In this document: piece after piece, positions 6,363-21,082 of the stretch
Numbering within the stretch: position 1 is the stretch's first letter
Layout of the letters: each line of letters opens with the position of its first letter
From: Botryllus schlosseri
Lineage: Eukaryota
DNA: 64,000 nucleotides
Direction: 5' to 3'
NCBI GenBank assembly: GCA_051294905.1
Contig: CM119379.1
Coordinates: forward strand, 18,910,001 to 18,974,000
The notes under the pieces: generated by a model
The model's database searches: none
Seen by the model: the letters and a program-made list of their open reading frames with translations, nothing else
Told to the model about the DNA's origin: nothing
Translations under genes and position numbers: made by a program

Positions 6363-6939
6363 GTTCCAAGTTCGCTACAGCATTTTCAACGATCTTAGAA
6401 AAAAATACCTGTGGTACACCACAGACCCACTATGAACTACGTAAGTCCAGTGCTCATCATAATCTCATCTACTAAACTTTCGCTAATCAACTAACCTAGG
6501 TCATATTCGTGATCATTGATTAACAACCATAAATCAGCCGTATTATCAGGCGCTTTAATCGGTACATACGATTCCCAGCGAGAACTGCACAGCAAATTTT
6601 TCAACTCTGTACAGTGTACAGATACTTTCATGATGCTAGCAGACCAGTGAGACCACACTCCTTGGGTTCAAATCGACGTGACGAGCCGGACTCGATTCCT
6701 GACAAGGCGTGTAAAATGAACGAATATTTGGCAGATTGCCAACAACAGATTTATTTATCAACATCTTTTAAGCGAAATTTATAACACAAAATAGACACAC
6801 AAATCTCTGTGAGTAGAGTCAAACACAACCTCACACTGCGCAGCTGTATCATCGAAGTGCCAGGAATCTGAAAAGAGCAAATTATTACTTTACATACAAC
6901 TGCATGTTACACAATAAATTAACTGTGTTAAACACCAGC

Positions 6940-7014
6940 TCAGTTTACAAATGAACGGGCCAGTTTGCATATCATACGCATTTGCGTCTTACTGGCGGAA
7001 TTAAGTCACATCAC
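6940..7014 (-). ncRNA. SNORD47: Box C/D snoRNA, SNORD47/U47-like copy 1
   Basis: GTGATGT ... ATTCCGCCAG ... GCCCGTTC ... CTGA; both elements are complementary to 28S GAACGGGCUUGGCGGAAU. Confidence 0.75.
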
Positions 7015-7214
7015 AGACCGAGAAAATGTGAAATCAAATATTTTTTACTATAAAAAACCCACCTGGTTTCACAAATCAGCAGGCCCTTGGAACAAGTCAA
7101 CAAATCCAATTCACATCTTAACACGAAACAGATTACTGGATCCAGACCTGAAACACGGATTTTACGTTAGTTCGAACTTTAGTTGTATGAAAAATATCAT
7201 AATGCTGTTTCTGC

Positions 7215-7287
7215 TCAGTTTATAGAAGAACGGGCCAGATTATATCACATGCATTTGCATCTTACTGGCGGAATTAAGTCACATCAT
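7215..7287 (-). ncRNA. SNORD47: SNORD47-like copy 2
   Basis: ATGATGT box C, same two antisense elements, CTGA box D 67 nt from the acceptor. Confidence 0.78.
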
Positions 7288-7491
7288 AGGCAGATAGGAT
7301 TCAAAATTGATCACTCCTAAGGTTGTTATTTATAATCAACCCCACCTGCATTGCCAATCAGACGTGTTCAACAGATCAAATGCAATTCGCTTCTTCGCCA
7401 AACAGAAGAGCTCTTTTCCTCCCGCCCTGAAACACGTCAAATTTTTATATTGAACTAGGCGGTAAACAAAAGAAATCACAATTACTCTTGC

Positions 7492-7566
7492 TCAGAATAT
7501 TTTAAGAACGGGCCAGTTTATATCACATGCATTAGCATCTTACTGGCGGAATTAAAGTCACATCAC
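7492..7566 (-). ncRNA. SNORD47: SNORD47-like copy 3
   Basis: GTGATGT, conserved guides, CTGA 65 nt from the acceptor. Confidence 0.78.
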
Positions 7567-7752
7567 AGGCAGATAGAATTCGAAATTGCTTATTCCCAAC
7601 CGCCATAAACAACCCACCTGGTATTACAAATCCGCAGGCCCTTGGAACAGGTCGACAAATCCACATTGCATCTTTGCAGACCTGAAACACGGATTTTTAC
7701 ATTAATTCAAACTTCAATTGGTACTCTAGAAATGTGAGATTGTTACACCAGC

Positions 7753-7825
7753 TCAGTATATAAAAGAACGGGCCAGTTTATATCACATGCATTAGCATCT
7801 TACTGGCGGAATTGAGTCACATCAT
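7753..7825 (-). ncRNA. SNORD47: SNORD47-like copy 4
   Basis: ATGATGT, conserved guides, CTGA 71 nt from the acceptor. Confidence 0.78.
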
Positions 7826-8017
7826 AGGCAGATAGAAGTTGAAACAAATTACATACAAGATTTTTATCAACACCCTACCTCTGTATCGTGAAAGAGACAT
7901 GCTGGATAGGTCGACAAACCCATATTGCATCGTTGCAGACCTGAAACACAGATTTTTACGTATTTTAAACTTCCTAGCGGTACTTCGAAAGTATCTGATT
8001 GTTACTCTTACTCTATC

Positions 8018-8090
8018 TCAGTTTATATGAGAACGGGCCAGTTTATATCACATGCATTAGCATCTTACTGGTGGAATTAAGTCACATCAT
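8018..8090 (-). ncRNA. SNORD47: SNORD47-like copy 5 (guide variant ATTCCACCAG)
   Basis: Boxes intact; G>A change in the centre of the guide (plus strand ctggtggaat). Confidence 0.7.
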
Positions 8091-8294
8091 AGGCAGATAG
8101 AATTTAAAATCGATCGCTCCTAAGGTTGTTATTTTTAATCAACCCCACCTGCATTGCCAATCTGGCGTGTTGAACAGATCAAATTCAATTCGCATCTTTG
8201 CCAAACAGAAGAGTTTTTTTCCTCCCGCCCTGAAACACGTCAAATTTTTATACCGAACTAGGCGGTAAACAAAAGAAATCACAACTACTCTAGC

Positions 8295-8367
8295 TCAGAA
8301 TATTTAAGAACGGGCCAGTTTATATCACATGCATTCGCATCTTACTGGCGGAATCAAGTCACATCAC
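8295..8367 (-). ncRNA. SNORD47: SNORD47-like copy 6
   Basis: GTGATGT, guide GATTCCGCCAG, CTGA 65 nt from the acceptor. Confidence 0.78.
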
Positions 8368-8551
8368 AGGCAGATAGTAGTCAAAACAAATCACCTAAGA
8401 TTTTTACAAACACCCTACCTCTGTATTGTGAACGAGACATGCTGAACAAGTCGACAAATCCACATTGCATCTTTGCAGACCTGAAAAACAGATTGCTACA
8501 CATTTCAAACTTCCCAGAGGTACTGCAAAAACAACTGATTGTTACTCTAGC

Positions 8552-8625
8552 TCAGTTTATATAAGAACGGGCCAGTTCATATCACATGCATTAGCATCTT
8601 ACTGGCGGAATTAAAATAACATCAT
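8552..8625 (-). ncRNA. SNORD47: SNORD47-like copy 7
   Basis: ATGATGT, conserved guides, CTGA 71 nt from the acceptor. Confidence 0.78.
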
Positions 8626-8804
8626 CGATGGATAGAATTTGAAGTCAGTAAAACCAACACAAAGCTAAAACATCTCACCAGTTTCACGAAGCAAATTTCT
8701 CCATTCAGATTGCGGGACCATTGACACATCTGAAACAGAGCAGACCATCAACCCAGTGGTCACACACAGCACTAAGCACTAAGTGCAAACGATGATGTCT
8801 TGGC

Positions 8805-8879
8805 TCAGTTTATATATGAACAGGTCCAGTTTATATCATATGCTTTTGCATCGTACTGGCGGAATTAAATTAACATCAT
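8805..8879 (-). ncRNA. SNORD47: SNORD47-like copy 8 (diverged second element GACCTGTTC)
   Basis: ATGATGT/CTGA and main guide intact; one change in the second element is G-U compatible. Confidence 0.74.
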
Positions 8880-9080
8880 AGGCAGATATAATAACAAATC
8901 GATCACTCTGAGCATATCTATTAACACCCCACCTGCACTGACAAGGGAACTTCAGATTGAGACAATCCACTCGCGTCTTTGCTCAACCAGATTATCAACT
9001 GCATCCAGACCTGAAACACATCAGATATTTTCATATTTATACCGTACTATGCGGTACAACAAATAAAATCATTATTACTC

Positions 9081-9651
9081 CCAAGCGGGTAGCCAGAGGG
9101 TTTTTTTGGGGATCGAAACCCGCCTTTTGAAGTGCGAAACCACTTTCTTTTGAAATGATCGTTCAAATGCTAATACCGGGTTGCAATTCTATAAGTTGTA
9201 TCATTAGTGTTGTGCGCGCTTAATTAGCGAGAGGCGTGTTGTCAATTGGCGAGATTGTCAGTGCACTGCACAATGTAACGCAGAACGATCTCCCGCCGAT
9301 CAGGTAGTTGATTGCCGCGGGCTCGGCGACTGCCGCCTGATTTATCACGTCTTCAACAAGCCTAGTTCCGCTGGCTTGAAGAATCGCATCTCTAATAGGC
9401 CCGGTGCGCACTATGCCATCGATGGCTTACACAATCGCGTCCTGCTTTGCGTGGTGCGCACGATATTATTGAGTATACTGATTTGTGAAAAATCACAATA
9501 TTTTTCTACTGCAAGCAGATAGGATCTTTAATCGATTTGCAACCGAAAATTCAACCATACAATGTAACAAATATCAACCTTTTTATTGGACAGTTTATGA
9601 AAATGACAGCTGCCCGAACCCAAAATACACTCAAATTCCCCCACCCCATCC
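9081..9651. mobile_element. Foreign insert of about 570 bp in the place of a SNORD47-like copy
   Basis: Intron 9011-9694 keeps the unit's flanks (attactc... and tagtcaaaacaaatcac...caccctac) but the snoRNA is replaced by unrelated sequence starting gggtagccagaggg. No TSD found. Confidence 0.45.
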
Positions 9652-9827
9652 TAGTCAAAACAAATCACTTGAAAGATGTTCACGAACACCCTACCTCTGT
9701 ATCGTGAACGAGACATGCTGAACAAGTCGACAAATCCACATTGCATCCTTGCAGACCTGAAACACAGATCTCTACACATTTCAAACTTTCTAGATGTGCT
9801 GCAAAAACAACTGATCGTTACTCTAGC

Positions 9828-9900
9828 TCAGTTCATATAAGAACGGGCCAGTTCATATCACATGCATTCGCATCTTACTGGCGGAATTAGGTCACATCAT
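9828..9900 (-). ncRNA. SNORD47: SNORD47-like copy 9
   Basis: ATGATGT, conserved guides, CTGA 71 nt from the acceptor. Confidence 0.78.
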
Positions 9901-10107
9901 AGGCAGATAGAATTCGAAATTGATCACTTCCAAGGTTGTTATTTATAATCAACCCCACCTGCATTGCCAATCAGACGTGTTGAACAGTTCATATTCAAAT
10001 CGCATCTTCGCCAAACAGAAAAAAAGCTCTTTTCCTCCAGCCCTGAAACGCTTCAAATTTTTATACCGAACTAGGCGGTAAACAAAAGAAATCACAATTA
10101 TTCCAGC

Positions 10108-10181
10108 TCAGAATATTCAAGAACGGGCCAGTTTATATCACATGCGTTTGCATCCTACTGGCGGAATTAAAGTCACATCAC
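10108..10181 (-). ncRNA. SNORD47: SNORD47-like copy 10
   Basis: GTGATGT, conserved guides, CTGA 65 nt from the acceptor. Confidence 0.78.
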
Positions 10182-10351
10182 AGGCAGATATCGTTCATTT
10201 TCAACTGATATAAAAAACCCACCTAGTATCACAAATCAGCAGGCCCCACGAATAGGTCAACAAATCAGCTAGATCCAGACCTGAAAAACGGATTTTTACA
10301 TTTTTAATAAATTGAAGAGGTACTACAAAAATATCCGGTTGTTATTCTAGC

Positions 10352-10425
10352 TCAGTTTATAGATGAACGGGCCAGCTCATATCACATGCAGTTGCATCGT
10401 ACTGGCGGAATTAATATAGCATCAC
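10352..10425 (-). ncRNA. SNORD47: SNORD47-like copy 11
   Basis: GTGATGC, conserved guides, CTGA 71 nt from the acceptor. Confidence 0.75.
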
Positions 10426-11166
10426 AGCAGATGAAATTTTGAAACCACAAAAGCTCAAACTCACCATTGCCGCAAGCAGATCATCGCACCAATAGATTCC
10501 GCTCCTAGACTAACGCAAGTCTACATGGATATCTGGAACACCACATGGCGACAATTACATTTCGAAAGACCGATCTGATCAGTCATGATCACACTTTCCA
10601 GAAGGCGACCAAAAATAACTAACAAGTTTCGCATATTGGCACCATTGGAGGCCGCCACGAGTCGCAAACAAGCCCGAGACGGTACTATGATATGCCGTTA
10701 ATATCGGCCGCCGCCGTTGTGGACTTCAGTTTGCTGCCACTTGCAAAACGCATGAAGGGCAAACCAGCCCGCACAGACAGCAAGCAGTCATAACGACGGC
10801 GGCCTCAACAGCTTATATGACAGGCTATCACAGTTAAACACAAAATACCACACACCATCAAGGAAGATAAGTGCTCACCGTCTGGTAGAACCAGGACATC
10901 CGAAGTTAAATGGGATGAAGCCTGAAACAGAGGAGTCCCGTCATCACGTTGTCGGCAGAGCAATACACAACACCGGTATTTCTAGACCAGCGCTACACCT
11001 AGGCCCTACAGATTCGACAGAAATTTGCCACGACATTGATATATGCCATACGGTTTTGCATGCACAGCACTGTTGCTGGCATAAAACCAGAAAGGCAACT
11101 GTCCGAAACAATACAATCAAAATCAGAACAATAACCCACTCGTTACATCATGGAGGTTAAACGTAC

Positions 11167-12155
11167 GGTAACCGGTGAACTCGGCCCATGACGAACTCGG
11201 CCTATGACAAACTCGGCCTATGACAAACTCGGCGAACTCGGCCTATGAACAACTCGGCCCATGGTGAATTTGTTAATAAAAATTATTATAAATGTCGTGA
11301 ATTGTATTGTGTGGAGACAATGGTGAATTGGTGGTGATGGACATGTCGTATGAATGTTATTATCAATGGGGGCAGTATCGTCAAGGAATAGGGCCTAGAC
11401 AGAAAAAAACCGCCTTGCACCAACTCAACTATTAATGTGAATTATATTACATAATTATATTATTATCAAGTGATTAGGTTAGGGTTATGATTAGGGTTAG
11501 GTTAGGGTTATGATTAGGGTTAGGTTAGGATTAGGTTAGGACTAGGGTTAGGTTAGGATTAGGATTAGGATAAGGGTTAGGATTAGGTTAGGGTTATGAT
11601 TAGGGTTATGATTAGGCTTAGGTTAGGGTTAGGATTATGATTAGGTTAGGATTAGGATTATGATTAGGGTTAGGATTAGGGTTAGGGTCCAACACTCCCA
11701 AATTAACCATTTTCTCCGACAAATAATACAATTTACGACGTTGATGATCATTCATACTAAGAATTCCCCCACGGGCCAAGTTGGTCATAGGCCGAGTTTG
11801 TCATGGGCCGAATTCGTCATAGGCTGCGTTCATCATGGGCCGAGTTCGTCATAGGCCGAGTTCGTCATGGGCCGAGTTCGTCATGGGCCGAGTTCGTCAT
11901 GGGCCGAGTTCACTGGCAATCCCCACGTGTTATGACGGCGGCAAGTAAAACTTCAAATTCTGAGAACTGCAATACTGCCCTCCCCCAGCATTCGTACGAC
12001 ATGTCCATCACTCCCAAATTAACCATTTTCTCCGACAAATACTACAATTTACGACGTTTATAATCATTAATACTAAGAAATTCCCCACGGGCCGAGTTCG
12101 TCATGGGCCGAGTTCAATAGGCCGAATTCGTCATGGGCCGAGTTCACTGGCATTC
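11167..12155. mobile_element. Non-autonomous DNA transposon with 8-bp TSD and modular TIRs (Merlin-like)
   Basis: TSD aaacgtac at 11159-11166 and 12156-12163. Ends ggtaaccggtgaactcggccc / gggccgagttcactggcattc. 16-bp tandem subrepeats (gggccgagttcgtcat) at both ends in inverted orientation; right-end module duplicated (11698-11920 and 12010-12155). The Merlin assignment (GGNRM end, 8-bp TSD) is inference. Confidence 0.7.
11473..11688 (+). repeat. Degenerate telomere-like (TTAGGG/TTAGGA/TTAGG)n tract inside the transposon
   Basis: Read directly from the sequence. Confidence 0.92.
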
Positions 12156-12303
12156 AAACGTACAGGGTGGATCCTGCCTTTGAATGATTTCATCTGGGCC
12201 AAGTACACTTATAATTGCCTGTATTGTCTGCCAACTCGAAATTCAATACTAGATACTTTCACGGAAATAATATATACCTCAAGACAGCCAATATCAATTC
12301 AAT

Positions 12304-12359
12304 TCATGCTTTCTACAAGGCACACGTGTCGTCATTCAGTTCACTACTCTTGACATCAA
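12304..12359 (-). ncRNA. SNORD75: Degenerate SNORD75-like C/D snoRNA copy
   Basis: TTGATGT-caagagtagtgaa-CTGA; paralog of 12521-12581 with an eroded box C, guide and terminal box D. Confidence 0.5.
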
Positions 12360-12520
12360 CGGGAGTAGAAATTAATCCCGTCAACCATTGCACTTACCTT
12401 GATCAAGCCTGAAATACTCGAGCTGTACGGAATCCATGTCTCAAAAATATCTGAAATGATATCGAGCGACTAATCATTAAATCATACTAAAGCGGCGACC
12501 TTTTCAAGCAGTCAACAACC

Positions 12521-12581
12521 TCAGTAATTTTTTGTTTTCTACAAGGCACAGGTGCCGTTCAGTCCACTACTCTGACATCAT
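12521..12581 (-). ncRNA. SNORD75: Box C/D snoRNA, SNORD75/U75-like
   Basis: ATGATGT-CAGAGTAGTGGA-CTGA(D')...CTGA(D), 61 nt. Guide is complementary to 28S CCACUACUCUGA; the D'+5 rule gives the C equivalent to human Cm4054 (older numbering Cm4032), the U75 target as recalled. Confidence 0.82.
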
Positions 12582-12928
12582 CGGAATTACAGATAGATCT
12601 GGACAAACAAACATTCAACCCACCTTGACAAAACTTCAATCGTTCAACTGCTTCACTGCAAAAAGAGAAAAAATATTGTTTAATGAATTCAGTTTGTTGC
12701 TCACTAATAGTTAGCCACAGTTTCTAGGTCAAAACTAGAAGATCACTTAAGAATGTAGCCAAGATAAAATTTACTCAGAAACGACCCTTACCTTTTACAC
12801 AATCAGATGCAGACTGCTGCCAACTCAACATGCACCTCTTGATCAGAGTTAACTACACAAACTGGAAAATTAGATAGATGATCACATGGGGAAAGTTACG
12901 GTCACCTTCATTCTTGCATTTTCATAGC

Positions 12929-12988
12929 TCAGAAAAGACCTCTCTCCACAGTTGAAAATTCAGATAGGGCAAGTCAATAAATCATCCC
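12929..12988 (-). ncRNA. SNORD103: SNORD103-like C/D snoRNA copy a (box C GGGATGA)
   Basis: Guide GACTTGCCCT + AT-CTGA(D'), complementary to 18S AGGGCAAGUC; terminal CTGA 67 nt from the acceptor. Confidence 0.65.
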
Positions 12989-13170
12989 GGCGCAAAATTT
13001 CAATGGATGCAGTCTCTTCAACCACACTCACCTCGTAATCACCTTCAGCGACGATCCAACAATTGCATATGTAGATCGACCAGTCCACACCACATGGTAC
13101 TGAGAAAGACAAAATACAAACTGAAACAACTGCCAAGCTGTGGCACCAGCAGGCTGCAGTCCAATACAGC

Positions 13171-13227
13171 TCAGAATAGACTCCACAACACTTCAAGTTC
13201 AGATAGGGCAAGTCAATTAATCATCTT
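13171..13227 (-). ncRNA. SNORD103: SNORD103-like copy b (box C AAGATGA)
   Basis: Same guide and D'; CTGA 71 nt from the acceptor; box C degenerate. Confidence 0.65.
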
Positions 13228-13409
13228 TGCCTGCCAAAGAATTCAATATCATCAATCACACTCACCTCAAAACCATTTCCAAGATGCAGCAGATGATCAC
13301 TCGACCAACGCCCAGCCCACTGAATTCTGACGATTTCACTGAAAAAGATGATAGCTGAAACAAACATAATTGTCAAACTACAATCTGGCAGACTAAGATT
13401 CAATACAGC

Positions 13410-13464
13410 TCAGAATAGACTCCTCAACACAAATTCAGATAGGGCAAGTCAAACAAATCATCAC
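13410..13464 (-). ncRNA. SNORD103: SNORD103-like copy c (canonical boxes)
   Basis: GTGATGA...GACTTGCCCTAT-CTGA...CTGA with a short terminal stem (cggc/gctg); D'+5 points to the 18S G equivalent to human Gm601 (recalled numbering). Confidence 0.8.
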
Positions 13465-14259
13465 AGCCGCCAGCCTGTTGATTATTGCATCACAGAAACA
13501 CTCACCTGAAATCTACTTTTTACTTGCCAATCATCGTTGAGATGTTCAATAAGCTGAAGATAAAATGAAGGAATCAATATTGCATGATATGAACTGGTAA
13601 ATGCTGTTTCAACTTCTAATAATCAACTTAAACATTGCATTACAAGTAATAACAGCTGTTTGAATGAATAGGGTTCCCACGCATTTAAAAGACAAACAAA
13701 TTTGATGGCTTGATTGACACTGATTTATCAGTTATTTTCATTGTCCCATATTCAATCTATATTGTTTAAACAGATTAGATTAGATTCGTCGGAACGAGTT
13801 AAGATGGTCCGTGGGAACCCTGAAACATGAACCTGGAGATAAGTTTATTTACTTCATTAGCACAATATGAACATTGGTACTTTACCTTTCTGTTGCTACG
13901 GGACATCCTTCGCTTTGCTTCCGAACTTTATGCGAACATTTTTATTTATTTGTTGATCGTCTCGTGGTTAAGCTTCGCGGATTGCAGTGTTTTAGGATTT
14001 TTTTGCAATTGCCAATTTTTCAAGAAAAGCTGATTTAGCTCAAGAAAATTTTGGAATTTACACATGGTTCAGAGGTTGCACAGACGCCTTGCGATTTACA
14101 CTCTGAAAAAAGGCACTGGAACACGTCCATACGGCATTAAGTGATTGACGCTCTGCAACTGTAATAAACTCGGATGTCATTGTCGGAGATGAAATTCACG
14201 ACTGGCAATGAAATTGAGCTGACATTACAACATCCCTTACTAACCGTTATCTACTAAAT

Positions 14260-14726
14260 CAGTGGTTCTCAACCTTTTTAGCTTAGGGACAGGTAAAATT
14301 CAATGCAAATTTGTGATTACAGGGAATGTGTACAATTCAAACTTTCAATTCATTCAGTAATCTCCTGCTGCCTTTTGGATAATGCTCTCGATGTGCACAG
14401 GTGTCGACGAGGCAAAGTGCCGTTTTAGCCTTAACCTTGATTTTGACAGTTTAATTTCTTTTCGAGGACCAGCAACTTTGCTGTTTGTGATAGCCGCAAC
14501 CAATTTAGTTATGTGTTCATAGCTTTGACACATCTGGTAGCAGGATACTTAGAAAGTCTGTTGGCATATTAGCAGCCAAGTAAAAGACATGCTAAATCTG
14601 TTAGGAATTTGATGTTTCATTTCTTTAATAACCAATGAACAAGCTTCATTTTACATCTGCAACTGACATTAGAGTATTACATTTGGCTCACAGCGAGCTT
14701 CGTTGACCGGCGGTTGAGAACCACTG
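14260..14726. mobile_element. hAT-like MITE
   Basis: TIR cagtggttctcaacc / ggttgagaaccactg; TSD tactaaat / taccaaat (7/8). Confidence 0.85.
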
Positions 14727-15173
14727 TACCAAATTACATTCAGCTCTTCCAGTTTTCTTCTCAATAACCAGCGTCGCAGAGACCAAGTATTTTGTTCGGC
14801 GGCAGACTCAAATTTCTTGACGATAAGTATTTTTTATTAGTATAAACTCAATAAAAGACATCGAGCGACCAGCGAACGTTAGACGGCGACTCATCACATG
14901 TTACATTGTAAACGCCTGGAGACGGTAAAAGTTTATTGTCGCGCCACAATGGGGTGGTTATCAACAGTAAGTTCCTGTGTCCGATTCGGTATTTATCTCC
15001 GTCGAGAATCACCGCTCCATTTACAGTTGTTTTTTCAAAAAAATGATTGTTGTGTAAAAGATTATGCGATGGCTTGCCTATCGCAATTGGAACGATTTCT
15101 CAAATCGCATTTTTCGAGCCAGTTCAGTTCAATCGTTTGTCCCGCCATCGCTACTAACCGGGAAGCGTCCTGG

Positions 15174-18100
15174 TTAGTACGGTTTCTGCCTGCCCCTCGA
15201 CGAACCGCCTCCTCTGCCCATCTTCGAACGGAACGACTGCCCGCCGAATCCACTGGCATTGCTCGCGCCGGTGCCATTTCCGTAAGAACCTGAGAGAAAT
15301 AACATTGAAAATGCTGACCACGCAGGACAACGGTACTACACTGCAAAATTACCATAAACGTCTTGTCCATAGCTGAAATCTTCGTTGTAAGATCTGTGGA
15401 GTAGAGGATCAGAGAAATAGACAAGACACGGCATGAATAGAATTGATCACGCTTACCCGTCGCCAAAACCATCACCGCCAAATCCGCCATCGTAAGCGCT
15501 GTCAAAATTGTCACCGTAGCCTTCGTAGCTCTGATCAAACGAAGTTCCTCCATACCCATCGTAGCTCTGTAAGTTCAGCACATCAAACGTGCTATAAATT
15601 ACGTCCACAAGTGGGGAAGGGGATAACATATCAAGTATCCTACCACTATAGTCTTGATTACCAATTGTTAAATTTGCAAAGAGATACGGGATGACAAGCG
15701 GTCAGACTATTTGTTGTTGGTAGGGCTGGGTTATGAATCACATCAGTCAAATCACTCATTGTGACATCACAACAGAACATAATATGTCAAAGATCAAATG
15801 AGTATCTGTTATGCCGCCACACATAATATAAGGCCTGTCATCCATCACATTGAAGACACTAGGGCATTGTTTCGACCATACGGGTTGCATTGCACTTAAT
15901 GACAATGTTGTGGGATGATCATGACTTTGGAAATGGTTTTTTTCAGTATGTTCGTAGCTTTGTTTCGTACGCTGCAATACGGCAAATCAAAGTTACGAGA
16001 CTTCCACCAAATAAAAAGCATTTTAAATGCAGTTTTGCCTAACAGCTGCATACCGACCGTGACGTGTACTCACATAGTCCTCGGCAAAGTTTTCAGCAGC
16101 CGCAGCAGCCTGCTGCATCTGGGCAAAATTCTGCGACTGTCCGCGTCCCCTGCCTCGCCCTGAGTCAACAATTACAAAATTAACAATGACGGTGCAATCA
16201 CGTGGTACACATACCTCTACCTCCTCTCCCGCCGCCAGTAGCCCCACCGCCACGGCCTCCTCCGCCGCCTCTACCCCCTCTGGAAAAACTGCCGCCCCGC
16301 GGATTCTGCCCTCGTCCACCGCCGCCACGGCCTCCTCGGGCCCTGCCACGCATAGCCGGGTGAGACATGGCAGCCTGCATGCCGAATTGAGCTTCGGTGG
16401 CTTCGTCAACAACGAGTAGTTTTTGGATTTCGGCAGCAGCCCGACCGAGATTGACGAAAGCCTGAAACAAGTCACGTTGAAGGTTTGACTAACTGGAGTG
16501 CATCAATTCTGACTCTACTATTAGGCTCGAGTAAAGAGTACTTCAATAACACTCATGGAATCACAAGGCTGTAAATGATGTGCAAAGTTGAAATATGTTA
16601 ACTTATGCGACCACAAAGAAAAACAGTTCCAGTTCGAAATCACATTGAAGAAGATTTCAATTATTAACATTTCATTCTTCTTTACGCCAAATATAGCTAA
16701 AATGATGCATAAAGAACAAATATGCATCTTTTACGGGACCACAAACAAATTAAATGCAGTACAAGATCACATCGCAGATAATTGAAACACACATACTATA
16801 TAAACCTATGCTTTCATCTTTATGACAACACTGCATAGCTTTGTCATTTTCAAAAACGTGCATAATACCTTGTACGTTATGATCCAACAGATTTTGATTT
16901 CAAGGCTTATACAGTAGTATCATAACTTTACAACTTTCATTTATAAATTATAGCTTGGGTGGAAGGGGCGTTCAATTCGAGTACCCGAAACAAACTTCTC
17001 TCAGTATTCGAATGAAGAGTCTTCATATAGAGCAATTATCAATACTCAAATAATCGTGCCTATAATAGTCGCGTCCAAAATCTTGGGACAAGGCACACAA
17101 TGCAGACATATAGAATACCTGAGGCACTGGTCCGACAGCTGAGATGTGTACATGCAGAGGGTAGTTCAGATGACTGTATTTCTCGTCAAAGTCTTTAAGT
17201 TCCTCAGCCTAGACGTTAAAGCAACACTATAGCAGTAAGATCGGGCACGGCAGACAAGGGGCATCCCTAAAAGACGGAGAAGCGGAGGCAGCGGAGACAG
17301 CGGAGGCAGCGGAGAACGGACCCTAAAACGCGGAAGCAACGGAGACGGCAGAGAGAGCCAAAAATGGCGATTCCTAAAAGACGGAGACAGCGGACCTAGC
17401 GGAGAGCGGAGCTTTCGGTCATTAACCTTTATAGACACGCGCGACATAGCGGACGGATACTGAAAGCGGAGTTCGGGACCCTGCGAAATGGACATAGCGG
17501 ACGGTTATATAATATAGAAAGCGGAGATCAGGGCGTATCCGAAGATGTTTCGAAGCAGTGGAGAATAACGGAGAAGTCAGCCATGCAAGTTCAAGGCCAA
17601 TTGGGCGACTGATTGCCCGTCGATGAGATGACATAGCGGGCGGTTATATAGTACAAAGAAAGCGGAGTTCGGGGCGTATCGGAAGATGTTTCGAAGCAGT
17701 GGAGAATAACGGAGAAGTCAGCCATGCCAGTTCAAGGCCAATTGGGCGACTGATTGCCCATCGATGAGATGACATAGCAGACGGTTATATCGTTATAATA
17801 TACTGAAAGCGGAGTTTGGGGCGTAGCGAAATATATTTCGAAACAGCAGAGAATAACGGAGAAGTCAGCCATGCGAGTTTCAGGCCAATTTGGTGACTGA
17901 TTGCCCATCGATGAGATGACATAGCGGACGGTTATAATATACTGAAAGCGGAGTTCGGGGCGCAGCGAAATATATTTCGAAACAGCAGAGAATAACGGAG
18001 AAGTCAGCCATGCGAGTTTCAGGCCAATTTGGTGACTGATTGCCCATCGATGAGATGACATAGCGGACGGTTATAATATACTGAAAGCGGAGTTCCAGGG

Positions 18101-21082
18101 CGTATCGGAAGATGTTTCGAAGCAGTGGAGAATAACGGAGAAGTCAGCCATGCGAGTTCAAGGCCAATTGGCGACTGCTGATTGCCCGTCGATGAGATGA
18201 CACAGCGGGCGGTTATATAATACAAAGAAAGCGGAGTTCGGGGCGTATCGGAAGATGTTTCGAAGCAGTGGAGAATAACGGAGAAGTCAGCCATATGCAA
18301 GTTCAAGGCCAATTGGGCGACTGATTGCCCAATGCCCATCGATGAGATGACATAGCGGGCGGTTATATAGTACAAAGAAAGCGGAGTTCGGGGCGTATCG
18401 GAAGATGTTTCGAAGCAGTGGAGAATAACGGTTTGATTTATCACATCACGTTGTTCAGATATTATATATGTTGAATATTTCTACTTTTTCGAGGTAATCA
18501 AGTAGATTTGGGCTATTTCCGGTACTTACTGAAGTGGTAATGTTTCGCAATTACTTCAACATCTACCTGAACAGTATTCTGGATGAAATAATTACATTTG
18601 CAATTCGGATTTTGTAAAGTAGAAAGTAGTTCAGTATAATATTCCACAACTATCAACAGTTAAATTGTCATACGAAACGCGTCCGCTATGTCATCTCATC
18701 GATGGGCAAGCAATCACCGAATTGGCCTGAAACTCGCATGGCAGACTTCTCCGTTATTCTCTGCTGTTTCGAAATATATTTCGCTACGCCCCAAACTCCG
18801 CTTTCAGTATATTATAACCGTCCGCTATGTCATCTCATCGATGGGCAATCAGTCACCAAATTGGCCTTGAACTTGCATGGCTGACTTCTCCGCTATTCTC
18901 CACTGCTTCGAAACATCTTCCGATACGCCCTGATCTCCGCTTTCTATATTATATAACCGTCCGCTATGTCTATTTCGCGGGGCCCCGAACTCCGCTTTCA
19001 GTATCCGTCCGCTATGTCATCTCATCGAAGGGCAATCAGTCGCCAATTGGCCTTGAACTCGCATGGCTGACTTCTCCGTTATTCTCCACTGCTTCGAAAC
19101 ATCTCCCGATACGCCCTGATCTCCGCTTTCTGTATTATATAACCGTCCGCTATGTCTATTTCGCGGCGCCCCGAACTCCGCTTTCAGTATCCGTCCGCTA
19201 TGTCATCTCATCGAAGGGCAATCAGTCGCCAATTGGCCTTGAACTCGCATGGCTGACTTCTCCGTTATTCTCCACTGCTTCGAAACATCTTCCGATACGC
19301 CCCGAACTCCGCTTTCCTTGTATTATATAACCGCCCGCTATGTCATCTCATCGATGGGCAATCAGTCGCCCAATTGGCCTTGAACTTGCATATGGCTGAC
19401 TTCTCCGTTATTCTGCACTGCTTCGAAACATCTTCCGATACGCCCCGAACTCCGCTTTCCTTGTATTATATAACCGCCCGCTATGTCATCTCATCGATGG
19501 GCAATCAGTCGCCCAATTGGCCTTGAACTTGCATGGCTGACTTCTCCGCTATTCTCCACTGCTTCGAAACATCTTCCGATACGCCCTGATCTCCGCTTTC
19601 TATATTATATAACCGTCCGCTATGTCTATTTCGCGGGGCCCCGAACTCCGCTTCAGTATCCGTCCGCTATGTCATCTCATCGATGGGCAATCAGTCGCCC
19701 AATTGGCCTTGAACTTGCATATGGCTGACTTCTCCGTTATTCTCCACTGCTTCGAAACATCTTCCGATACGCCCCGAACTCCGCTTTCCTTGTATTATAT
19801 AACCGCCCGCTATGTCATCTCATCGATGGGCAATCAGTCGCCCAATTGGCCTTGAACTTGCATGGCTGACTTCTCCGTTATTCTCCACTGCTTCGAAACA
19901 TCTTCCGATACGCCCCGATCTCCGCTTTCTATATTATATAACTGTCCGCTATGTCCATTTCGCGGGGTCCCGGACTCCGCTTTCAGTATCCGTCCGCTAT
20001 GTCGCGCGTGTCTATAAAGGTTAATGACCGAAAGCTCCGCTCTCCGCTAGGTCCGCTGTCTCCGTCTTTTAGGAATCGGCATTTTTGGCTCTCTCCGCCG
20101 TCTCCGTTGCTTCTGCGTTTTAGAGTCCGTTCTCCGCTGCCTCCGCTGTCTCCGCTGCCTCCGCTTCTCCGTCTTTTAGGGATGCCCGCAGACAAGACAG
20201 AATCGCACAACATACCTTTTTGCGGTCAGCTTCTCTGACAGAGCCTTTACCGAGAACAGCCATCTTTGTGTTGGTTAGTTCTTGAAGGCCCTTCATTGTT
20301 GCTCCGCCAGGGCCGATCAGGCGTCCCACGAAGTTTACCTAAAATTGCAAACATTCATTCAAATCAAAAAAGCAATTCATCAAATTTAGGCATTATACTC
20401 TTTGGCAATTGACAATCAGCTACAACTTCAAACTTGATCGTCAATTTACATTATCGATCATTTTTCAAGAAAACGTGCATTCATTTTGCTACATACATGC
20501 TTTCAAGTGCACAATATATTGCATTGGATACATAATTGAATGCTGAATTCAGTATGATTTGTCGTAAAAGTCAATGGACATTTTGTTTGGCCACACGACT
20601 CTCATCTCTTATACTACACGGTAATAGGTGTAATCAACATATAGCAATGATAATAATTATAAATGGATAAATGGTGATGTGGGTTTATTGTCAAAGATAA
20701 TTTCAATGTTGCGGTATCAAATTAGTGGCTTACCGAGGGAAATTTCTCAGCAGGAACAAGAATATCGCATTCAACTTTCTGTGGTCTACCAGAAACGTCG
20801 AGCAGGACTTTCTTGGAACTCGTCTTGGGCGCTTCTTTCTTAGGATTCTTGATGTTTTCGATTTCTGCAGCAAATACCGATTGTTGAAATAGATTATTAC
20901 ATGTTCAAAGTTTATTCGAGATATCTAGGATCATTCAGAAGTTATTTCGAAAAAACGCAGTGCACCGGAGAAAATTCTGTCTTACCTTCAGAAATCAGCC
21001 GGACTGCATGTTCGAACGAAGGATCGATACTGTCTTTTTCAGCCATAAGCTCAGGAAGGTACTTGCCATCATTTTGCTCCAT
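15174..21082 (-). CDS. KHDRBS: KH-domain STAR-family RNA-binding protein (Sam68/SLM-like), 9 coding exons, 346 aa
   Basis: Exons 20986-21082, 20734-20864, 20216-20338, 17119-17208, 16215-16461, 16074-16159, 15457-15566, 15353-15393, 15174-15289, all GT-AG and phase-consistent (1041 nt). QUA1 '[17 protein letters not shown]', KH '[12 protein letters not shown]...[10 protein letters not shown]', RG-rich region, Tyr-rich tail ending RGRQKPY*. AATAAA at 14833-14838. Confidence 0.95.
15760..16000. repeat. Interspersed repeat (MITE fragment) in a KHDRBS intron
   Basis: Aligns by eye with 39488-39750 (shared aatgttgtgggatgatcatgactttggaaatg); a related tagggctggg / cccagcccta end is at 15721 and about 39920. 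Confidence 0.6.
17259..20187. mobile_element. Foldback/Mutator-like element: 2.9-kb palindrome with minisatellite arms
   Basis: Perfect 9-bp TSD gcagacaag (17250-17258, 20188-20196). TIR gggcatccctaaaagacggagaagcgg. Arms 17259-18432 and about 18681-20187 are inverted and built from about 140-bp units (about 6.5 left, about 8 right) plus 9-bp gcggag repeats; loop about 250 bp; no transposase. Confidence 0.9.

What the first reader, a model, noticed from the sequence alone, without database searches (positions are those of the whole stretch)
6730..14115. Candidate invertebrate GAS5-like host: U47 and U75 guides co-hosted in one lncRNA, plus a SNORD103-like triplet
Seen: upstream introns of the same minus-strand transcript carry two SNORD75-like and three SNORD103-like snoRNAs, and each family is locally duplicated (11, 2 and 3 copies). 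Known: human GAS5 hosts both U47 and U75, while SNORD103 lies in a different, protein-coding host. Inference: the U47/U75 linkage may predate vertebrates, with snoRNA cargo exchanged between hosts. Flanking synteny (KHDRBS, AHI1) does not match human GAS5, so orthology is not proven.
Basis: partly seen in the sequence, partly recalled or inferred. Interest (0 to 1): 0.75.

Follow-up and report, generated by a model that had tools for sequence, protein, structure and literature searches.

The report
Sea-squirt non-coding snoRNA host gene
A sea-squirt gene that makes no protein is spliced from about 21 tiny exons, and its introns carry 17 small guide RNAs for ribosomal RNA modification; two of the four guide families also travel together in the vertebrate GAS5 gene, but that single shared pair does not show the two genes are the same.

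Summary
On the minus strand, about 14250 to 6735, lies a spliced, apparently non-coding snoRNA host with one snoRNA per intron: three SNORD103-like, two SNORD75-like (the second decayed) and 11 tandem SNORD47-like units.

- **One transcript:** RNA reads and contigs from four studies give a continuous chain of GT..AG joints from 13506 to 8478, so all groups share one spliced RNA.
- **Family assignments:** Rfam fails at gathering threshold (0 hits; SNORD47 never appears). Guide, D' register and overall similarity to published chicken U47, U75 and U103 support all three. The guides pair with the expected sites on real eukaryotic rDNA.
- **GAS5 orthology is not supported beyond that one pair:** guides for the seven other GAS5 functions are absent, and RNA contigs run upstream of both proposed 5'TOP starts. 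A Sam68-like gene ends about 700 nt upstream on the same strand, so read-through is not excluded.
- **Chance:** a four-family host shares a pair with some human host about 3% of the time, and many hosts were scanned in this genome.

Earlier notes of this scan already described the U47-like array on this same stretch. Verdict: a well-supported new member of a known kind; GAS5 orthology is possible (about 25%) but unproven.

The parts
6735..14250 (-). Whole host transcription unit. The 5' end is unresolved (at least 14170-14250). The 3' end is predicted about 20-30 nt after the AATAAA at 6755-6750.
   Evidence: Chain of GT..AG joints in 4 runs from 4 studies; loose ends placed uniquely; splice sites; poly(A) signal.
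13886..14250 (-). First exon, upstream limit unknown.
   Evidence: The X3 contig runs from 13886 to 51 nt beyond 14199. The X4 contig covers 13706-14170. Donor is AAAG|GTAAAG at 13886/13885.
13404..13471 (-). C1, SNORD103-like box C/D snoRNA. It has a canonical C box GUGAUGA, D' guide GACUUGCCCU plus AU before CUGA, and box D.
   Evidence: The guide pairs with SSU AGGGCAAGUC 12 nt 5' of the 530 loop in L093. The register is the same as chicken GGgCD15. Box D lies 71 nt from the 3' splice site.
13165..13235 (-). C2, SNORD103-like, with C box AGAUGA.
   Evidence: SNORD103 is the top Rfam hit when C2 is searched alone: 18.6 bits, E 0.071, gathering score 45. The guide and the 2-nt spacer match the consensus.
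12923..12996 (-). C3, SNORD103-like, with C box GGAUGA and a D guide that differs from C1 and C2.
   Evidence: Box D lies 67 nt from the 3' splice site.
12520..12592 (-). B1, SNORD75-like. It has C box AUGAUGU, D' guide CAGAGUAGUGGA before CUGA, and box D CUGA.
   Evidence: Rfam SNORD75 scores 17.6 bits with the guide identical to the consensus. Same register as chicken U75; z = 3.7 against chicken U75. Box D lies 70 nt from the 3' splice site.
12280..12362 (-). B2, a decayed SNORD75-like copy. The guide is CAAGAGUAGUGAA, UUGA stands in place of box D, and it lies at the 5' end of a 1476-nt intron.
   Evidence: z = 1.7 only. The intron is defined by a 12-nt loose end found only at 10909-10920.
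10922..12397 (-). Long intron holding B2, degenerate TTAGGG-like repeats (11454-11702), 16-nt tandem repeats and duplicated segments.
10631..10797 (-). H box is AUAUUA. The 3' pocket strands UCAUAGUAC and CCUCCAA match the SNORA23 consensus, and the terminal box is AUA.
   Evidence: Rfam gives 24.3 bits, E 0.26 (gathering score 45). The fold shows two hairpins with 15 nt from pocket top to AUA. No target was found on the four protist rDNA loci.
6945..10437 (-). Array of 11 SNORD47-like units, one per intron. Approximate starts are 10437, 10185, 9905, 8885, 8625, 8375, 8100, 7835, 7570, 7295 and 7025. Between them lie non-coding exons of 51-85 nt in two or three recurring types.
   Evidence: The snoRNA body is 86% identical between copies, against 50-52% for the flanking intron parts. 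Box D lies 65-77 nt from the 3' splice site in all copies. z = 4.5-6.3 against chicken U47.
9011..9694 (-). A wrecked 12th array unit. The intron ends are homologous to a U47-bearing intron, but about 600 nt of unrelated sequence replaces the snoRNA.
   Evidence: joint 9008|9693 seen in 4 runs.
6735..6867 (-). Predicted last exon, with AATAAA at 6755-6750.
   Evidence: Acceptor TTTTCAG| at 6867; signal. This part was not covered by the reads laid.
14260..14726 (.). MITE-like insertion between the KHDRBS 3' end and the host, with perfect 15-nt terminal inverted repeats.
   Evidence: The X3 RNA contig stops at its edge.
14838..20329 (-). 3' half of the upstream Sam68/KHDRBS-like gene on the same strand. 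The KH exon is near 20230-20329, the RGG exon at 16215-16470, the stop near 15175, and AATAAA signals near 14940 and 14838.

Best explanation
This is a multi-exon, apparently non-coding snoRNA host gene of an ascidian. RNA polymerase II transcribes the minus strand from at or beyond 14250 down to about 6735. About 21 short exons (32-133 nt apart from the first) are spliced together. Each excised intron releases, by exonucleolytic trimming, one snoRNA protected by its box C/D or H/ACA proteins.

Predicted cargo and targets:
- U103-like: 2'-O-methylation of SSU rRNA at the middle G of AGGGC, just 5' of the 530 loop (human Gm601).
- U75-like: LSU rRNA at CCAC*UACUCUG (human Cm4054).
- U47-like: LSU rRNA at UUGGC*GGAAU (human Cm3887), or the neighbouring G. 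This guide is helped by a second conserved block that pairs with the directly adjacent GAACGGGC.
- SNORA23-like: probably one pseudouridine.

The U47-like cassette (exon plus intron) was amplified in tandem to 12 units, of which 11 survive. The spliced exons are most likely a by-product.

The gene resembles vertebrate GAS5 in architecture and in carrying U75 upstream of U47. It carries no other GAS5 cargo, so I treat it as a lineage-shaped host whose orthology to GAS5 is open.

Shown: the splicing chain, box and guide anatomy, conservation of the snoRNA bodies, and intron placement. Inferred: snoRNA accumulation, the actual methylated positions, and the non-coding status.
For: Splicing:
- GT..AG joints are seen in raw RNA reads (X23) and in contigs of three further studies: 13506|13338, 13266|13099, 12792|12655, 12624|12450, 10465|10280, 10223|10042, 9959|9756, 9695|9010, 8933|8729 and 8679|8480.
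- One 237-nt X4 contig spans the exons from 13100 to 12397 plus 12 nt that occur only at 10909-10920.
- An 8-nt loose end links 10533 to 10880.

snoRNA anatomy:
- Boxes C, D', C' and D and terminal helices of 3-6 bp are present.
- Box D lies 65-77 nt from the 3' splice site in all 14 canonical units. From my own knowledge, this is the window known to favour splicing-coupled box C/D processing.
- Across the 11 array copies the snoRNA body is 86% identical, the intron flanks 50-52%. A11 has a compensatory change in the D'-C' hairpin.

Family identity:
- The guide and D' spacing equal those of chicken U75 and U103. Chicken U47 shares the guide, the C' box TGTGATAT and the internal CsGTTC block.
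- Each family's best z-score is to the expected chicken family.
- The Rfam consensus guides for SNORD75 and SNORD103 are identical to those here.

Targets:
- A pattern built only from family A's two blocks retrieved eukaryotic LSU rDNA reading GGGAACGGGC-U-UGGCGGAAU.
- The family B site lies 106-113 nt downstream of it, and the family C site is in the SSU next to the 530 loop.
- Human site assignments come from PMC11550049 and PMC6856654.

Non-coding status: there are 18-28 stops per frame, and many upstream ATGs.
Against: - No Rfam family reaches its gathering score, and SNORD47 is not hit even at E up to 10 on a single unit.
- No small-RNA data were available, so accumulation of the snoRNAs is not shown. 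Steady-state host RNA is low: 70 reads in about 6% of run X23.
- Family A has one extra nucleotide before D' relative to chicken U47, so the N+5 rule points to the G next to the conserved C.
- A 203-codon ORF crosses the array exons and exceeds the shuffled controls.
- The 5' end is unknown.
- The H/ACA target was not found.
- The rDNA used is from unidentified protists, not from this animal.
Confidence: 0.85

Rival explanations
1. True GAS5 orthologue. The U75-U47 linkage in a non-coding short-exon host was already present in the common ancestor of tunicates and vertebrates. Vertebrates then added U74, U76, U80, U44, U78, U79 and U81, while the ascidian added U103, SNORA23 and the U47 amplification.
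For: - U75 and U47 are both in the chicken and human gas5 host (PMC2653536), and both are here in one spliced RNA.
- The order is the same, with U75 5' of U47 (file 5).
- The architecture is the same.
- The gas5-like host is described as a hotspot of snoRNA gain in vertebrates, so a small ancestral cargo is plausible.
- U79, U74, U47 and U75 modify neighbouring 28S positions.
Against: - Only 2 of 9 non-mammal-specific GAS5 guide functions are present. The other seven are absent from the host, and no convincing copy lies elsewhere in the 64-kb window.
- A four-family host shares a pair with a human-like host partition in about 3% of random draws. Dozens of hosts were examined in this genome, so about one such hit is expected by chance.
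- The TOP start is not supported.
- The neighbours do not match the GAS5 region: KHDRBS is here, and human GAS5 is at 1q25 (my own knowledge).
- Exon sequence cannot be compared.
Confidence: 0.25
2. Not an independent lncRNA. The snoRNA-bearing exons are a spliced 3' extension or read-through of the upstream Sam68/KHDRBS-like gene, so the snoRNAs are expressed from that gene's promoter.
For: - The strand is the same. The KHDRBS stop is near 15175 and its poly(A) signals near 14940 and 14838, only about 600-700 nt from the most upstream RNA evidence for the host.
- RNA contigs pass both proposed starts and end at a repeat edge rather than at a plausible start.
- No promoter evidence is available.
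Against: - KHDRBS has two canonical AATAAA signals before the host.
- No joint between a KHDRBS exon and a host exon was seen, but the laid stretch ended at 14199.
- Contigs cannot show starts.
Confidence: 0.2
3. Part of the cargo is dead. Many of the 17 units are pseudogene copies that are not assembled into snoRNPs, and only one or a few per family work.
For: - B2 lacks CUGA and has a changed guide.
- C2 and C3 lack the first U of box C.
- A04 has a changed internal block, and A07 has a changed guide and 3' flank.
- One array unit has already lost its snoRNA.
Against: - Nine of the 11 array copies keep all boxes, the guide, the internal block and intron placement.
- Conservation of the snoRNA body far exceeds that of the flanks.
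Confidence: 0.5
4. The array exons encode a real 203-residue protein, so the locus is a protein-coding snoRNA host.
For: The longest open frame of 224 codons exceeds all 2000 within-exon shuffles and 99.7% of exon-order permutations.
Against: - Paralogous exons are read in three different phases.
- The 62-nt exons are stop-free in all frames, so openness is a property of the repeat.
- The ORF starts 794 nt into the RNA, behind many ATGs.
- Exon skipping and copy-number variants seen in the reads would break the frame.
Confidence: 0.04

Closest known systems
Vertebrate GAS5 / gas5-like snoRNA host (human, mouse, chicken mRNA CR387333)
   Same: Both are non-coding and built of many short exons with one box C/D snoRNA per intron. 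Both carry U75 and, further 3', U47. Both show local snoRNA duplication ('hotspot of snoRNA gene expansion', PMC2653536).
   Different: This host has no U74, U76, U80/U77, U44, U78, U79 or U81. It carries U103-like units (PUM1 introns in vertebrates), an H/ACA unit and an 11-fold U47 array. A 5'TOP start is not shown, the neighbours differ, and NMD or growth-arrest behaviour is untested.
Drosophila Uhg genes and mammalian SNHG1/UHG-type non-coding hosts
   Same: All are lncRNAs whose introns are the functional product, with multiple snoRNAs and tandemly repeated exon-intron cassettes.
   Different: The cargo families differ, and no orthology is claimed.
SNORD47 (chicken GGgCD56)
   Same: Both have the D' guide ACUUrAUUCyGCCAG to LSU UUGGCGGAAU, the C' box UGUGAUAU and an internal CsGUUC block complementary to the adjacent GGAACGG.
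   Different: This version has one extra nucleotide between guide and D', and the D' box is A(A/C/G)GA rather than AUGA. Its internal block is longer (CUGGCCCGUUC). There is no Rfam hit, and there are 11 copies instead of one.
SNORD75 (chicken GGgCD60) and SNORD103/SNORD85 (chicken GGgCD15a-c)
   Same: The guide cores (AGAGUAGUGGA; ACUUGCCCU) and the distance to D' are identical, so the predicted target nucleotide is the same.
   Different: The rest of each RNA has diverged, with Rfam scores of 15-19 bits against gathering scores of 45-50. U103 sits in a different host than in vertebrates.
Extra base-pairing in box C/D guides (van Nues et al. 2011, from my own knowledge; paper not read here)
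   Same: A conserved second element pairs with rRNA directly next to the guide duplex.
   Different: This is inferred from sequence only. It was the topic of another note of this scan (s1-286674).

Membership tests
Box C/D snoRNA (generic) | Box C (RUGAUGA) near the 5' end and box D (CUGA) near the 3' end, brought together by a short terminal helix | tested here: met
   14 units have both boxes, with helices of 3-6 bp. C2 and C3 have a substituted first U, and B2 has UUGA.
Box C/D snoRNA (generic) | A guide of 10 or more nt directly upstream of D or D', complementary to rRNA | tested here: met
   Duplexes of 10-13 bp form at the expected LSU and SSU sites on loci L008, L065, L093 and L117. My generic score did not beat shuffled guides on these divergent rDNAs, so the support comes from site identity with the chicken duplexes.
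Box C/D snoRNA (generic) | Intronic position about 60-90 nt upstream of the 3' splice site | tested here: met
   65-77 nt in all 14 canonical units.
SNORD47 (Rfam) | Covariance-model score at or above gathering | tested here: not met
   No SNORD47 hit at gathering, nor at E up to 10 on 671 nt or on a single unit.
SNORD47 (functional) | D' guide to LSU UUGGC*GGAAUC (human Cm3887; chicken C3376) | tested here: met
   The duplex is the same as for chicken GGgCD56. z = 4.5-6.3 against chicken U47, 0 of 500 shuffles.
SNORD47 (functional) | Target C paired with the 5th nucleotide upstream of D' | tested here: inconclusive
   GCCAGU|A(N)GA places the C at N+6 and the neighbouring G at N+5. Chicken has GCCAG|AUGA.
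SNORD75 | Covariance-model score at or above gathering | tested here: not met
   17.6 bits against 50.
SNORD75 | D' guide AGAGUAGUGGA, with target C in ACCAC*UACUCUG at N+5 | tested here: met
   B1 matches the Rfam consensus and chicken GGgCD60 in both guide and register. B2 keeps only about 9 bp.
SNORD103/SNORD85 | Covariance-model score at or above gathering | tested here: not met
   18.6 and 15.5 bits against 45. SNORD103 is the best family only for C2 searched alone.
SNORD103/SNORD85 | D' guide ACUUGCCCU plus a 2-nt spacer, targeting the middle G of SSU GGAGGGCAAGU | tested here: met
   All three copies meet this, with the same register as chicken GGgCD15a-c. The site is found in L093 next to the 530 loop.
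SNORA23 | Two hairpins, an H box, an ACA box 3 nt from the end, and conserved pockets | tested here: inconclusive
   24.3 bits against 45. The 3' pocket and geometry fit, AUA stands in place of ACA, the 5' pocket is not conserved, and no target was found.
GAS5 orthologue | Non-coding, short-exon host with one snoRNA per intron | tested here: met
GAS5 orthologue | The GAS5 cargo set (U74, U75, U76, U80/77, U44, U78, U79, U47, U81) | tested here: not met
   Only U75 and U47 are present. The seven other guide functions are absent, while the positive controls are all recovered.
GAS5 orthologue | 5'-terminal oligopyrimidine transcription start | tested here: inconclusive
   Pyrimidine tracts exist at 14113-14105 and near 14030, but RNA contigs reach 14170 and about 14250. 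There are no cap data.
GAS5 orthologue | Conserved flanking genes | not testable with these tools
   The upstream neighbour is KHDRBS-like. The human GAS5 neighbourhood is known to me only from memory, and no other tunicate or amphioxus genome could be fetched.
GAS5 orthologue | NMD sensitivity and accumulation on growth arrest | not testable with these tools
   Needs experiments.

The most novel reading that the evidence does not exclude
The locus is the tunicate orthologue of GAS5. A non-coding host carrying U75 upstream of U47 already existed in the last common ancestor of tunicates and vertebrates, which would make GAS5 one of the oldest traceable lncRNA genes. Its cargo was then reshuffled with other hosts: U103 with the Pumilio/KHDRBS neighbourhood, and SNORA23.
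Probability: 0.25. Interest if true: 0.7.

Novelty: new member of a known kind. Interest (0 to 1): 0.42.

Why it matters
Tunicate snoRNAs and their hosts are almost uncharted. Covariance-model surveys recover only 12-24 families, and the authors say they have not been systematically investigated (PMC5006418).

This locus offers three things:
- **A validated example:** one spliced non-coding host with four cargo families. It also shows that guide-and-register comparison succeeds where Rfam thresholds fail.
- **A view of host growth and decay:** a cassette amplified 12-fold, one unit already destroyed, and one U75 copy decaying.
- **A testable evolutionary question:** if the U75-U47 linkage proves ancestral, it would date a well-known lncRNA gene to before the vertebrates and give a rare anchor for lncRNA orthology. 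If it does not, it illustrates how easily snoRNA cargo re-assorts between hosts.

Tried and rejected
- **Rfam:** gathering on the whole window gave nothing. Permissive scans gave only sub-threshold hits, and generic box matches (SNORD31, snoR38) outscored the right family for C1 and C3. There was nothing at all for family A.
- **Generic antisense scoring:** scoring of guides against the four metagenomic rDNA loci did not beat shuffles. The loci are divergent protists and 10-bp duplexes are common, so I relied on site identity instead.
- **H/ACA pocket scan:** no target was found.
- **D guides:** those of families B and C, and the conserved GUGCCUUGUAGAAA block of B1 and B2, have no rRNA target.
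- **Papers not held or without supplements:** Smith & Steitz 1998 and the Drosophila snoRNA catalogue are not held. The Drosophila Nm-map supplements are not held either, so U47/U75 linkage in flies could not be checked.
- **Earlier findings:** a look-up by sequence was blank.
- **Other genomes:** tunicate, amphioxus or echinoderm genomes could not be fetched with these tools. The flanking-protein route was dropped because only short exon translations have a reference.
- **Trans-spliced leader at 13898:** rejected, because the loose part is about 100 nt long and diverges before the AG.
- **Loci left unread:** L045, L073 and L080 are human-gut metagenome contigs that could be human rDNA. I did not read, compare or search them.

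Full report
**What is there.** Read on the minus strand, 14300-6600 has the layout of a snoRNA host gene: short exons bounded by AG|GTRRG donors and TTTCAG| acceptors, with one snoRNA-like unit in most introns. Earlier notes of this scan identify the genome as a sea squirt. A direct-repeat scan shows a 260-280-nt cassette repeated between about 6900 and 10450.

I extracted 16 box C/D units:
- Three of family C: 13471-13404, 13235-13165, 12996-12923.
- Two of family B: 12592-12520 and about 12362-12280.
- Eleven of family A, between 10437 and 6945.

Two things were not in its note:
- An H/ACA candidate at 10797-10631 (SNORA23, 24.3 bits, E 0.26). Its fold gives two hairpins, an AUAUUA hinge and 15 nt from the top of the 3' pocket to a terminal AUA.
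- A 684-nt intron (9694-9011). Its first 43 nt and last ~70 nt align with a U47-bearing paralogue, but its middle is unrelated sequence. It is a 12th cassette that lost its snoRNA.

**One transcript.** I laid one raw-read RNA-seq run and contigs of three other studies on 8200-14199. Joints with CT..AC ends on the + strand (GT..AG on the minus strand) form an unbroken chain. After small shifts to the GT-AG positions, the exon borders are 13506|13338, 13266|13099, 13032|12861, 12792|12655, 12624|12450, 12398|10921, 10879|10532, 10465|10280, 10223|10042, 9959|9756, 9695|9010, 8933|8729 and 8679|8480.

The two links that matter most for the claim are covered:
- A 237-nt contig of run X4 holds the exons from 13100 down to 12397 and then 12 letters that occur only at 10909-10920 in the whole window. 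That is the first bases of the exon after the 1476-nt intron.
- An 8-letter loose end at 10533 matches 10880-10887.

Other loose ends join to array exons below 8200 (7066, 7349, 7881, 7913). This shows exon skipping or copy-number differences between haplotypes. Below 8200 the exons are predicted from splice motifs and paralogy. The last exon carries AATAAA at 6755-6750.

**Are the units snoRNAs?**
- Fourteen units have both terminal boxes, and box D ends 65-77 nt before the 3' splice site in every one. From my own knowledge, this tight placement is the distance that favours splicing-coupled box C/D snoRNP assembly.
- Terminal helices are 3-6 bp.
- Across the 11 array introns the C-to-D body is 86% identical on average, while the intron parts before and after it are 52% and 50%.
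- The invariant columns are the boxes, the D' guide and an internal block CUGGCCCGUUC. The 9 nt before box D vary freely, so there is no second guide.
- Copy A11 changes both sides of the small D'-C' hairpin (AUGC/GCAU to ACGC/GCGU), a compensatory pair.
- Some copies are imperfect. B2 has a changed guide, UUGA for box D and a 1476-nt intron. C2 and C3 lack the first U of box C. A04 and A07 carry changes in the internal block or the guide.

**Family assignments.** Covariance models do not confirm them at curated thresholds:
- No family reaches gathering anywhere in the window.
- SNORD75 scores 17.6 bits against 50.
- SNORD103 scores 18.6 and 15.5 bits against 45, and generic matches such as SNORD31 outscore it for C1 and C3.
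- SNORD47 is never hit, even for one unit at E up to 10.

But a survey of tunicate ncRNAs reports that such models find only 12-24 snoRNA families in tunicates, because the sequences diverge fast (PMC5006418). So I tested the defining functional features directly.

- **Rfam consensus guides.** The sub-threshold alignments show guides identical to the consensus: AGAGUAGUGGAC for SNORD75, and ACUUGCCCU with the same 2-nt spacer before CUGA for SNORD103.
- **Chicken sequences.** The supplement of the chicken snoRNA catalogue prints sequences and duplexes (PMC2653536).
  - U47 (GGgCD56) pairs with UUGGCGGAAUCA through ...ACUUGAUUCUGCCAG|AUGA. It also has the C' box UGUGAUAU and an internal ...CGGUUCC... 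block, and family A shares all three.
  - U75 (GGgCD60) pairs with ACCACUACUCUGAU through ...AGAGUAGUGGA|CAGA, the same register as B1.
  - U103/HBII-251 (GGgCD15a-c) pairs with GGAGGGCAAGU through ACUUGCCCUCN|CUGA, the same register as C1-C3.
- **Alignment scores.** In global alignments with shuffled controls, each ascidian family scores best against the expected chicken family. Family A against U47 gives z = 4.5-6.3 (0 of 500 shuffles). B1 against U75 gives z = 3.7. C1-C3 against U103 give z = 3.2-4.8.
- **Real rDNA.** A pattern made only from the reverse complements of family A's two conserved blocks retrieved eukaryotic LSU rDNA. It reads ...CCAAGG-GAACGGGC-U-UGGCGGAAU-CAGCGGGGAAAGAAGACCC, so the two blocks pair with directly adjacent rRNA. 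On the same loci the family B site lies 106-113 nt downstream. The family C site lies in the SSU 12 nt before the 530 loop.
- **Published site assignments.** SNORD47 is assigned to 28S Cm3887, SNORD75 to Cm4054 (old C4032, assay primer GAAATACCACTACTCTGATCG), and SNORD103/85 to 18S Gm601.

I therefore accept the three labels as functional homologues. There is one open point. Family A has an extra U between guide and D' (GCCAGU|A(A/C/G)GA against chicken GCCAG|AUGA), so the N+5 rule points to the G next to the conserved C.

**Is it non-coding, and where does it start?**
- The spliced model (1587 nt with a provisional start at 14113) has 18-28 stops per frame, and an early 43-codon ORF that ends in exon 1.
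- A 203-codon ATG ORF crosses array exons E11-E20 and exceeds the shuffled controls. However, paralogous exons are read in three phases, the 62-nt exons have no stop in any frame, and the ORF starts 794 nt into the RNA. I regard it as a by-product of the repeat.
- The 5' end is unresolved. An X3 contig runs from the donor at 13886 to about 14250, and an X4 contig covers 13706-14170 at exon-like depth. RNA therefore extends beyond both TOP candidates.
- The X3 contig stops at the edge of a MITE-like element with perfect 15-nt inverted repeats at 14260-14274 and 14712-14726.
- Upstream on the same strand lies the Sam68/KHDRBS-like gene: KH domain, RGG and YG-rich exons, stop near 15175, and AATAAA near 14940 and 14838. 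Read-through from that gene is not excluded.
- Four raw reads leave the window sequence at 13898 with about 100 nt found nowhere in the window. This is unexplained and may be another haplotype.

**GAS5 or not.**

In favour:
- Chicken and human gas5 carry U75 (intron 2) and U47 (intron 10) in that order (file 5), and here too U75-like lies 5' of U47-like.
- The architecture is the same.
- The gas5-like host is known as a hotspot for snoRNA gain.
- Four GAS5 snoRNAs (U79, U74, U47, U75) modify positions within about 224 nt of 28S.

Against:
- I searched the window for the chicken guide elements of U74, U76, U80 (both guides), U44, U78, U79 and U81 next to a box. None is in the host and none is convincing elsewhere, while the same search recovers every U47-, U75- and U103-like unit.
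- An illustrative simulation gives about 3% for a four-family host to share at least one pair with a human-like partition of hosts. The scan holds 65 notes fitting 'snoRNA host' in this genome alone, so about one such coincidence is expected.
- The TOP start is unsupported, and the neighbours differ.

I found no paper describing a GAS5-like or any snoRNA host in tunicates.

A second, equally loose synteny hint points elsewhere. Vertebrate U103 sits in PUM1, and a copy-number table places PUM1 and KHDRBS1 about 1-2 Mb apart on human 1p35. Here the U103-like triplet is about 1 kb downstream of the KHDRBS homologue. I put that at about 25%.

**Verdict.** This is a real, spliced, apparently non-coding multi-snoRNA host gene of an ascidian, with U103-, U75-, SNORA23- and (11x) U47-like cargo. 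It is a new member of a known kind. The GAS5 reading is an attractive hypothesis that needs other tunicate, cephalochordate and cyclostome genomes, cap mapping and rRNA methylation maps.

**Handling note.** Three loci returned by the metagenome scan (L045, L073, L080) come from human-gut metagenomes and might be human rDNA. I did not read, compare or search them.

Noticed in passing
window 10631-10797 (-): An H/ACA snoRNA candidate lies in the intron between exons 10921-10879 and 10532-10465. Its 3' pocket (UCAUAGUAC / CCUCCAA) matches the SNORA23 consensus and its terminal box is AUA. Rfam gives 24.3 bits (gathering score 45). No target was found on the rDNA loci at hand.
   Followed up: partly
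window 9011-9694 (-): The snoRNA-less 684-nt intron is a 12th U47 cassette. Its ends align with the A06 intron, but about 600 nt of unrelated sequence replaces the snoRNA. Part of that sequence (9200-9400) has high contig depth in X4, as a repeat expressed elsewhere would.
   Followed up: partly
window 7063-10042 (-), spliced exons E11-E20: A 203-codon ATG ORF (224 codons open) runs across the array exons, longer than in any of 2000 within-exon shuffles. Paralogous exons are read in three phases, and the 62-nt exons have no stop in any frame.
   Followed up: partly
window 14260-14726: A MITE-like element with perfect 15-nt terminal inverted repeats (CAGTGGTTCTCAACC) lies between the KHDRBS poly(A) signals and the host's first exon. 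An RNA contig ends at its edge.
   Followed up: partly
window 13670-13821 (-): A foldback with a 12-bp stem (GGGUUCCCACG.../...CGUGGGAACCC) lies inside the first intron, z = -3.0 against shuffles. No snoRNA boxes were seen. It may be a small inverted-repeat element.
   Followed up: no
window 13898 (-): Four raw RNA reads match up to 13898 and then continue upstream with about 100 nt that occur nowhere in the 64-kb window. This may be another haplotype or a structural variant at the host's 5' region.
   Followed up: partly
window 11454-11702 and 11754-11929, 11180-11270, 12090-12150: The 1476-nt intron holds a degenerate TTAGGG-like (telomere-type) repeat block and arrays of a 16-nt unit (CATGGGCCGAGTTCGT). 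A 112-nt segment is duplicated at 11687-11798 and 12003-12114.
   Followed up: no
window 12923-13471 (-) versus 14838-20329 (-): The U103-like triplet lies about 1 kb downstream of the KHDRBS homologue. In human, PUM1 (the vertebrate U103 host) and KHDRBS1 lie about 1-2 Mb apart on 1p35 (table in PMC8269103). This may be a trace of old linkage, or it may be chance.
   Followed up: partly
window 12520-12592 and 12280-12362 (-): B1 and B2 share a conserved block GUGCCUUGUAGAAA downstream of D', preceded by a small hairpin (GGCAC..GUGCC in B1). It has no rRNA complement on the loci tested and is not present in chicken U75.
   Followed up: partly
window 13404-13471 and 13165-13235 (-): C1 and C2 keep an identical 3' antisense element GGAGUCUAUU directly before box D. 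It is absent from chicken U103 and no target was found. It may be a lineage-specific second guide.
   Followed up: partly
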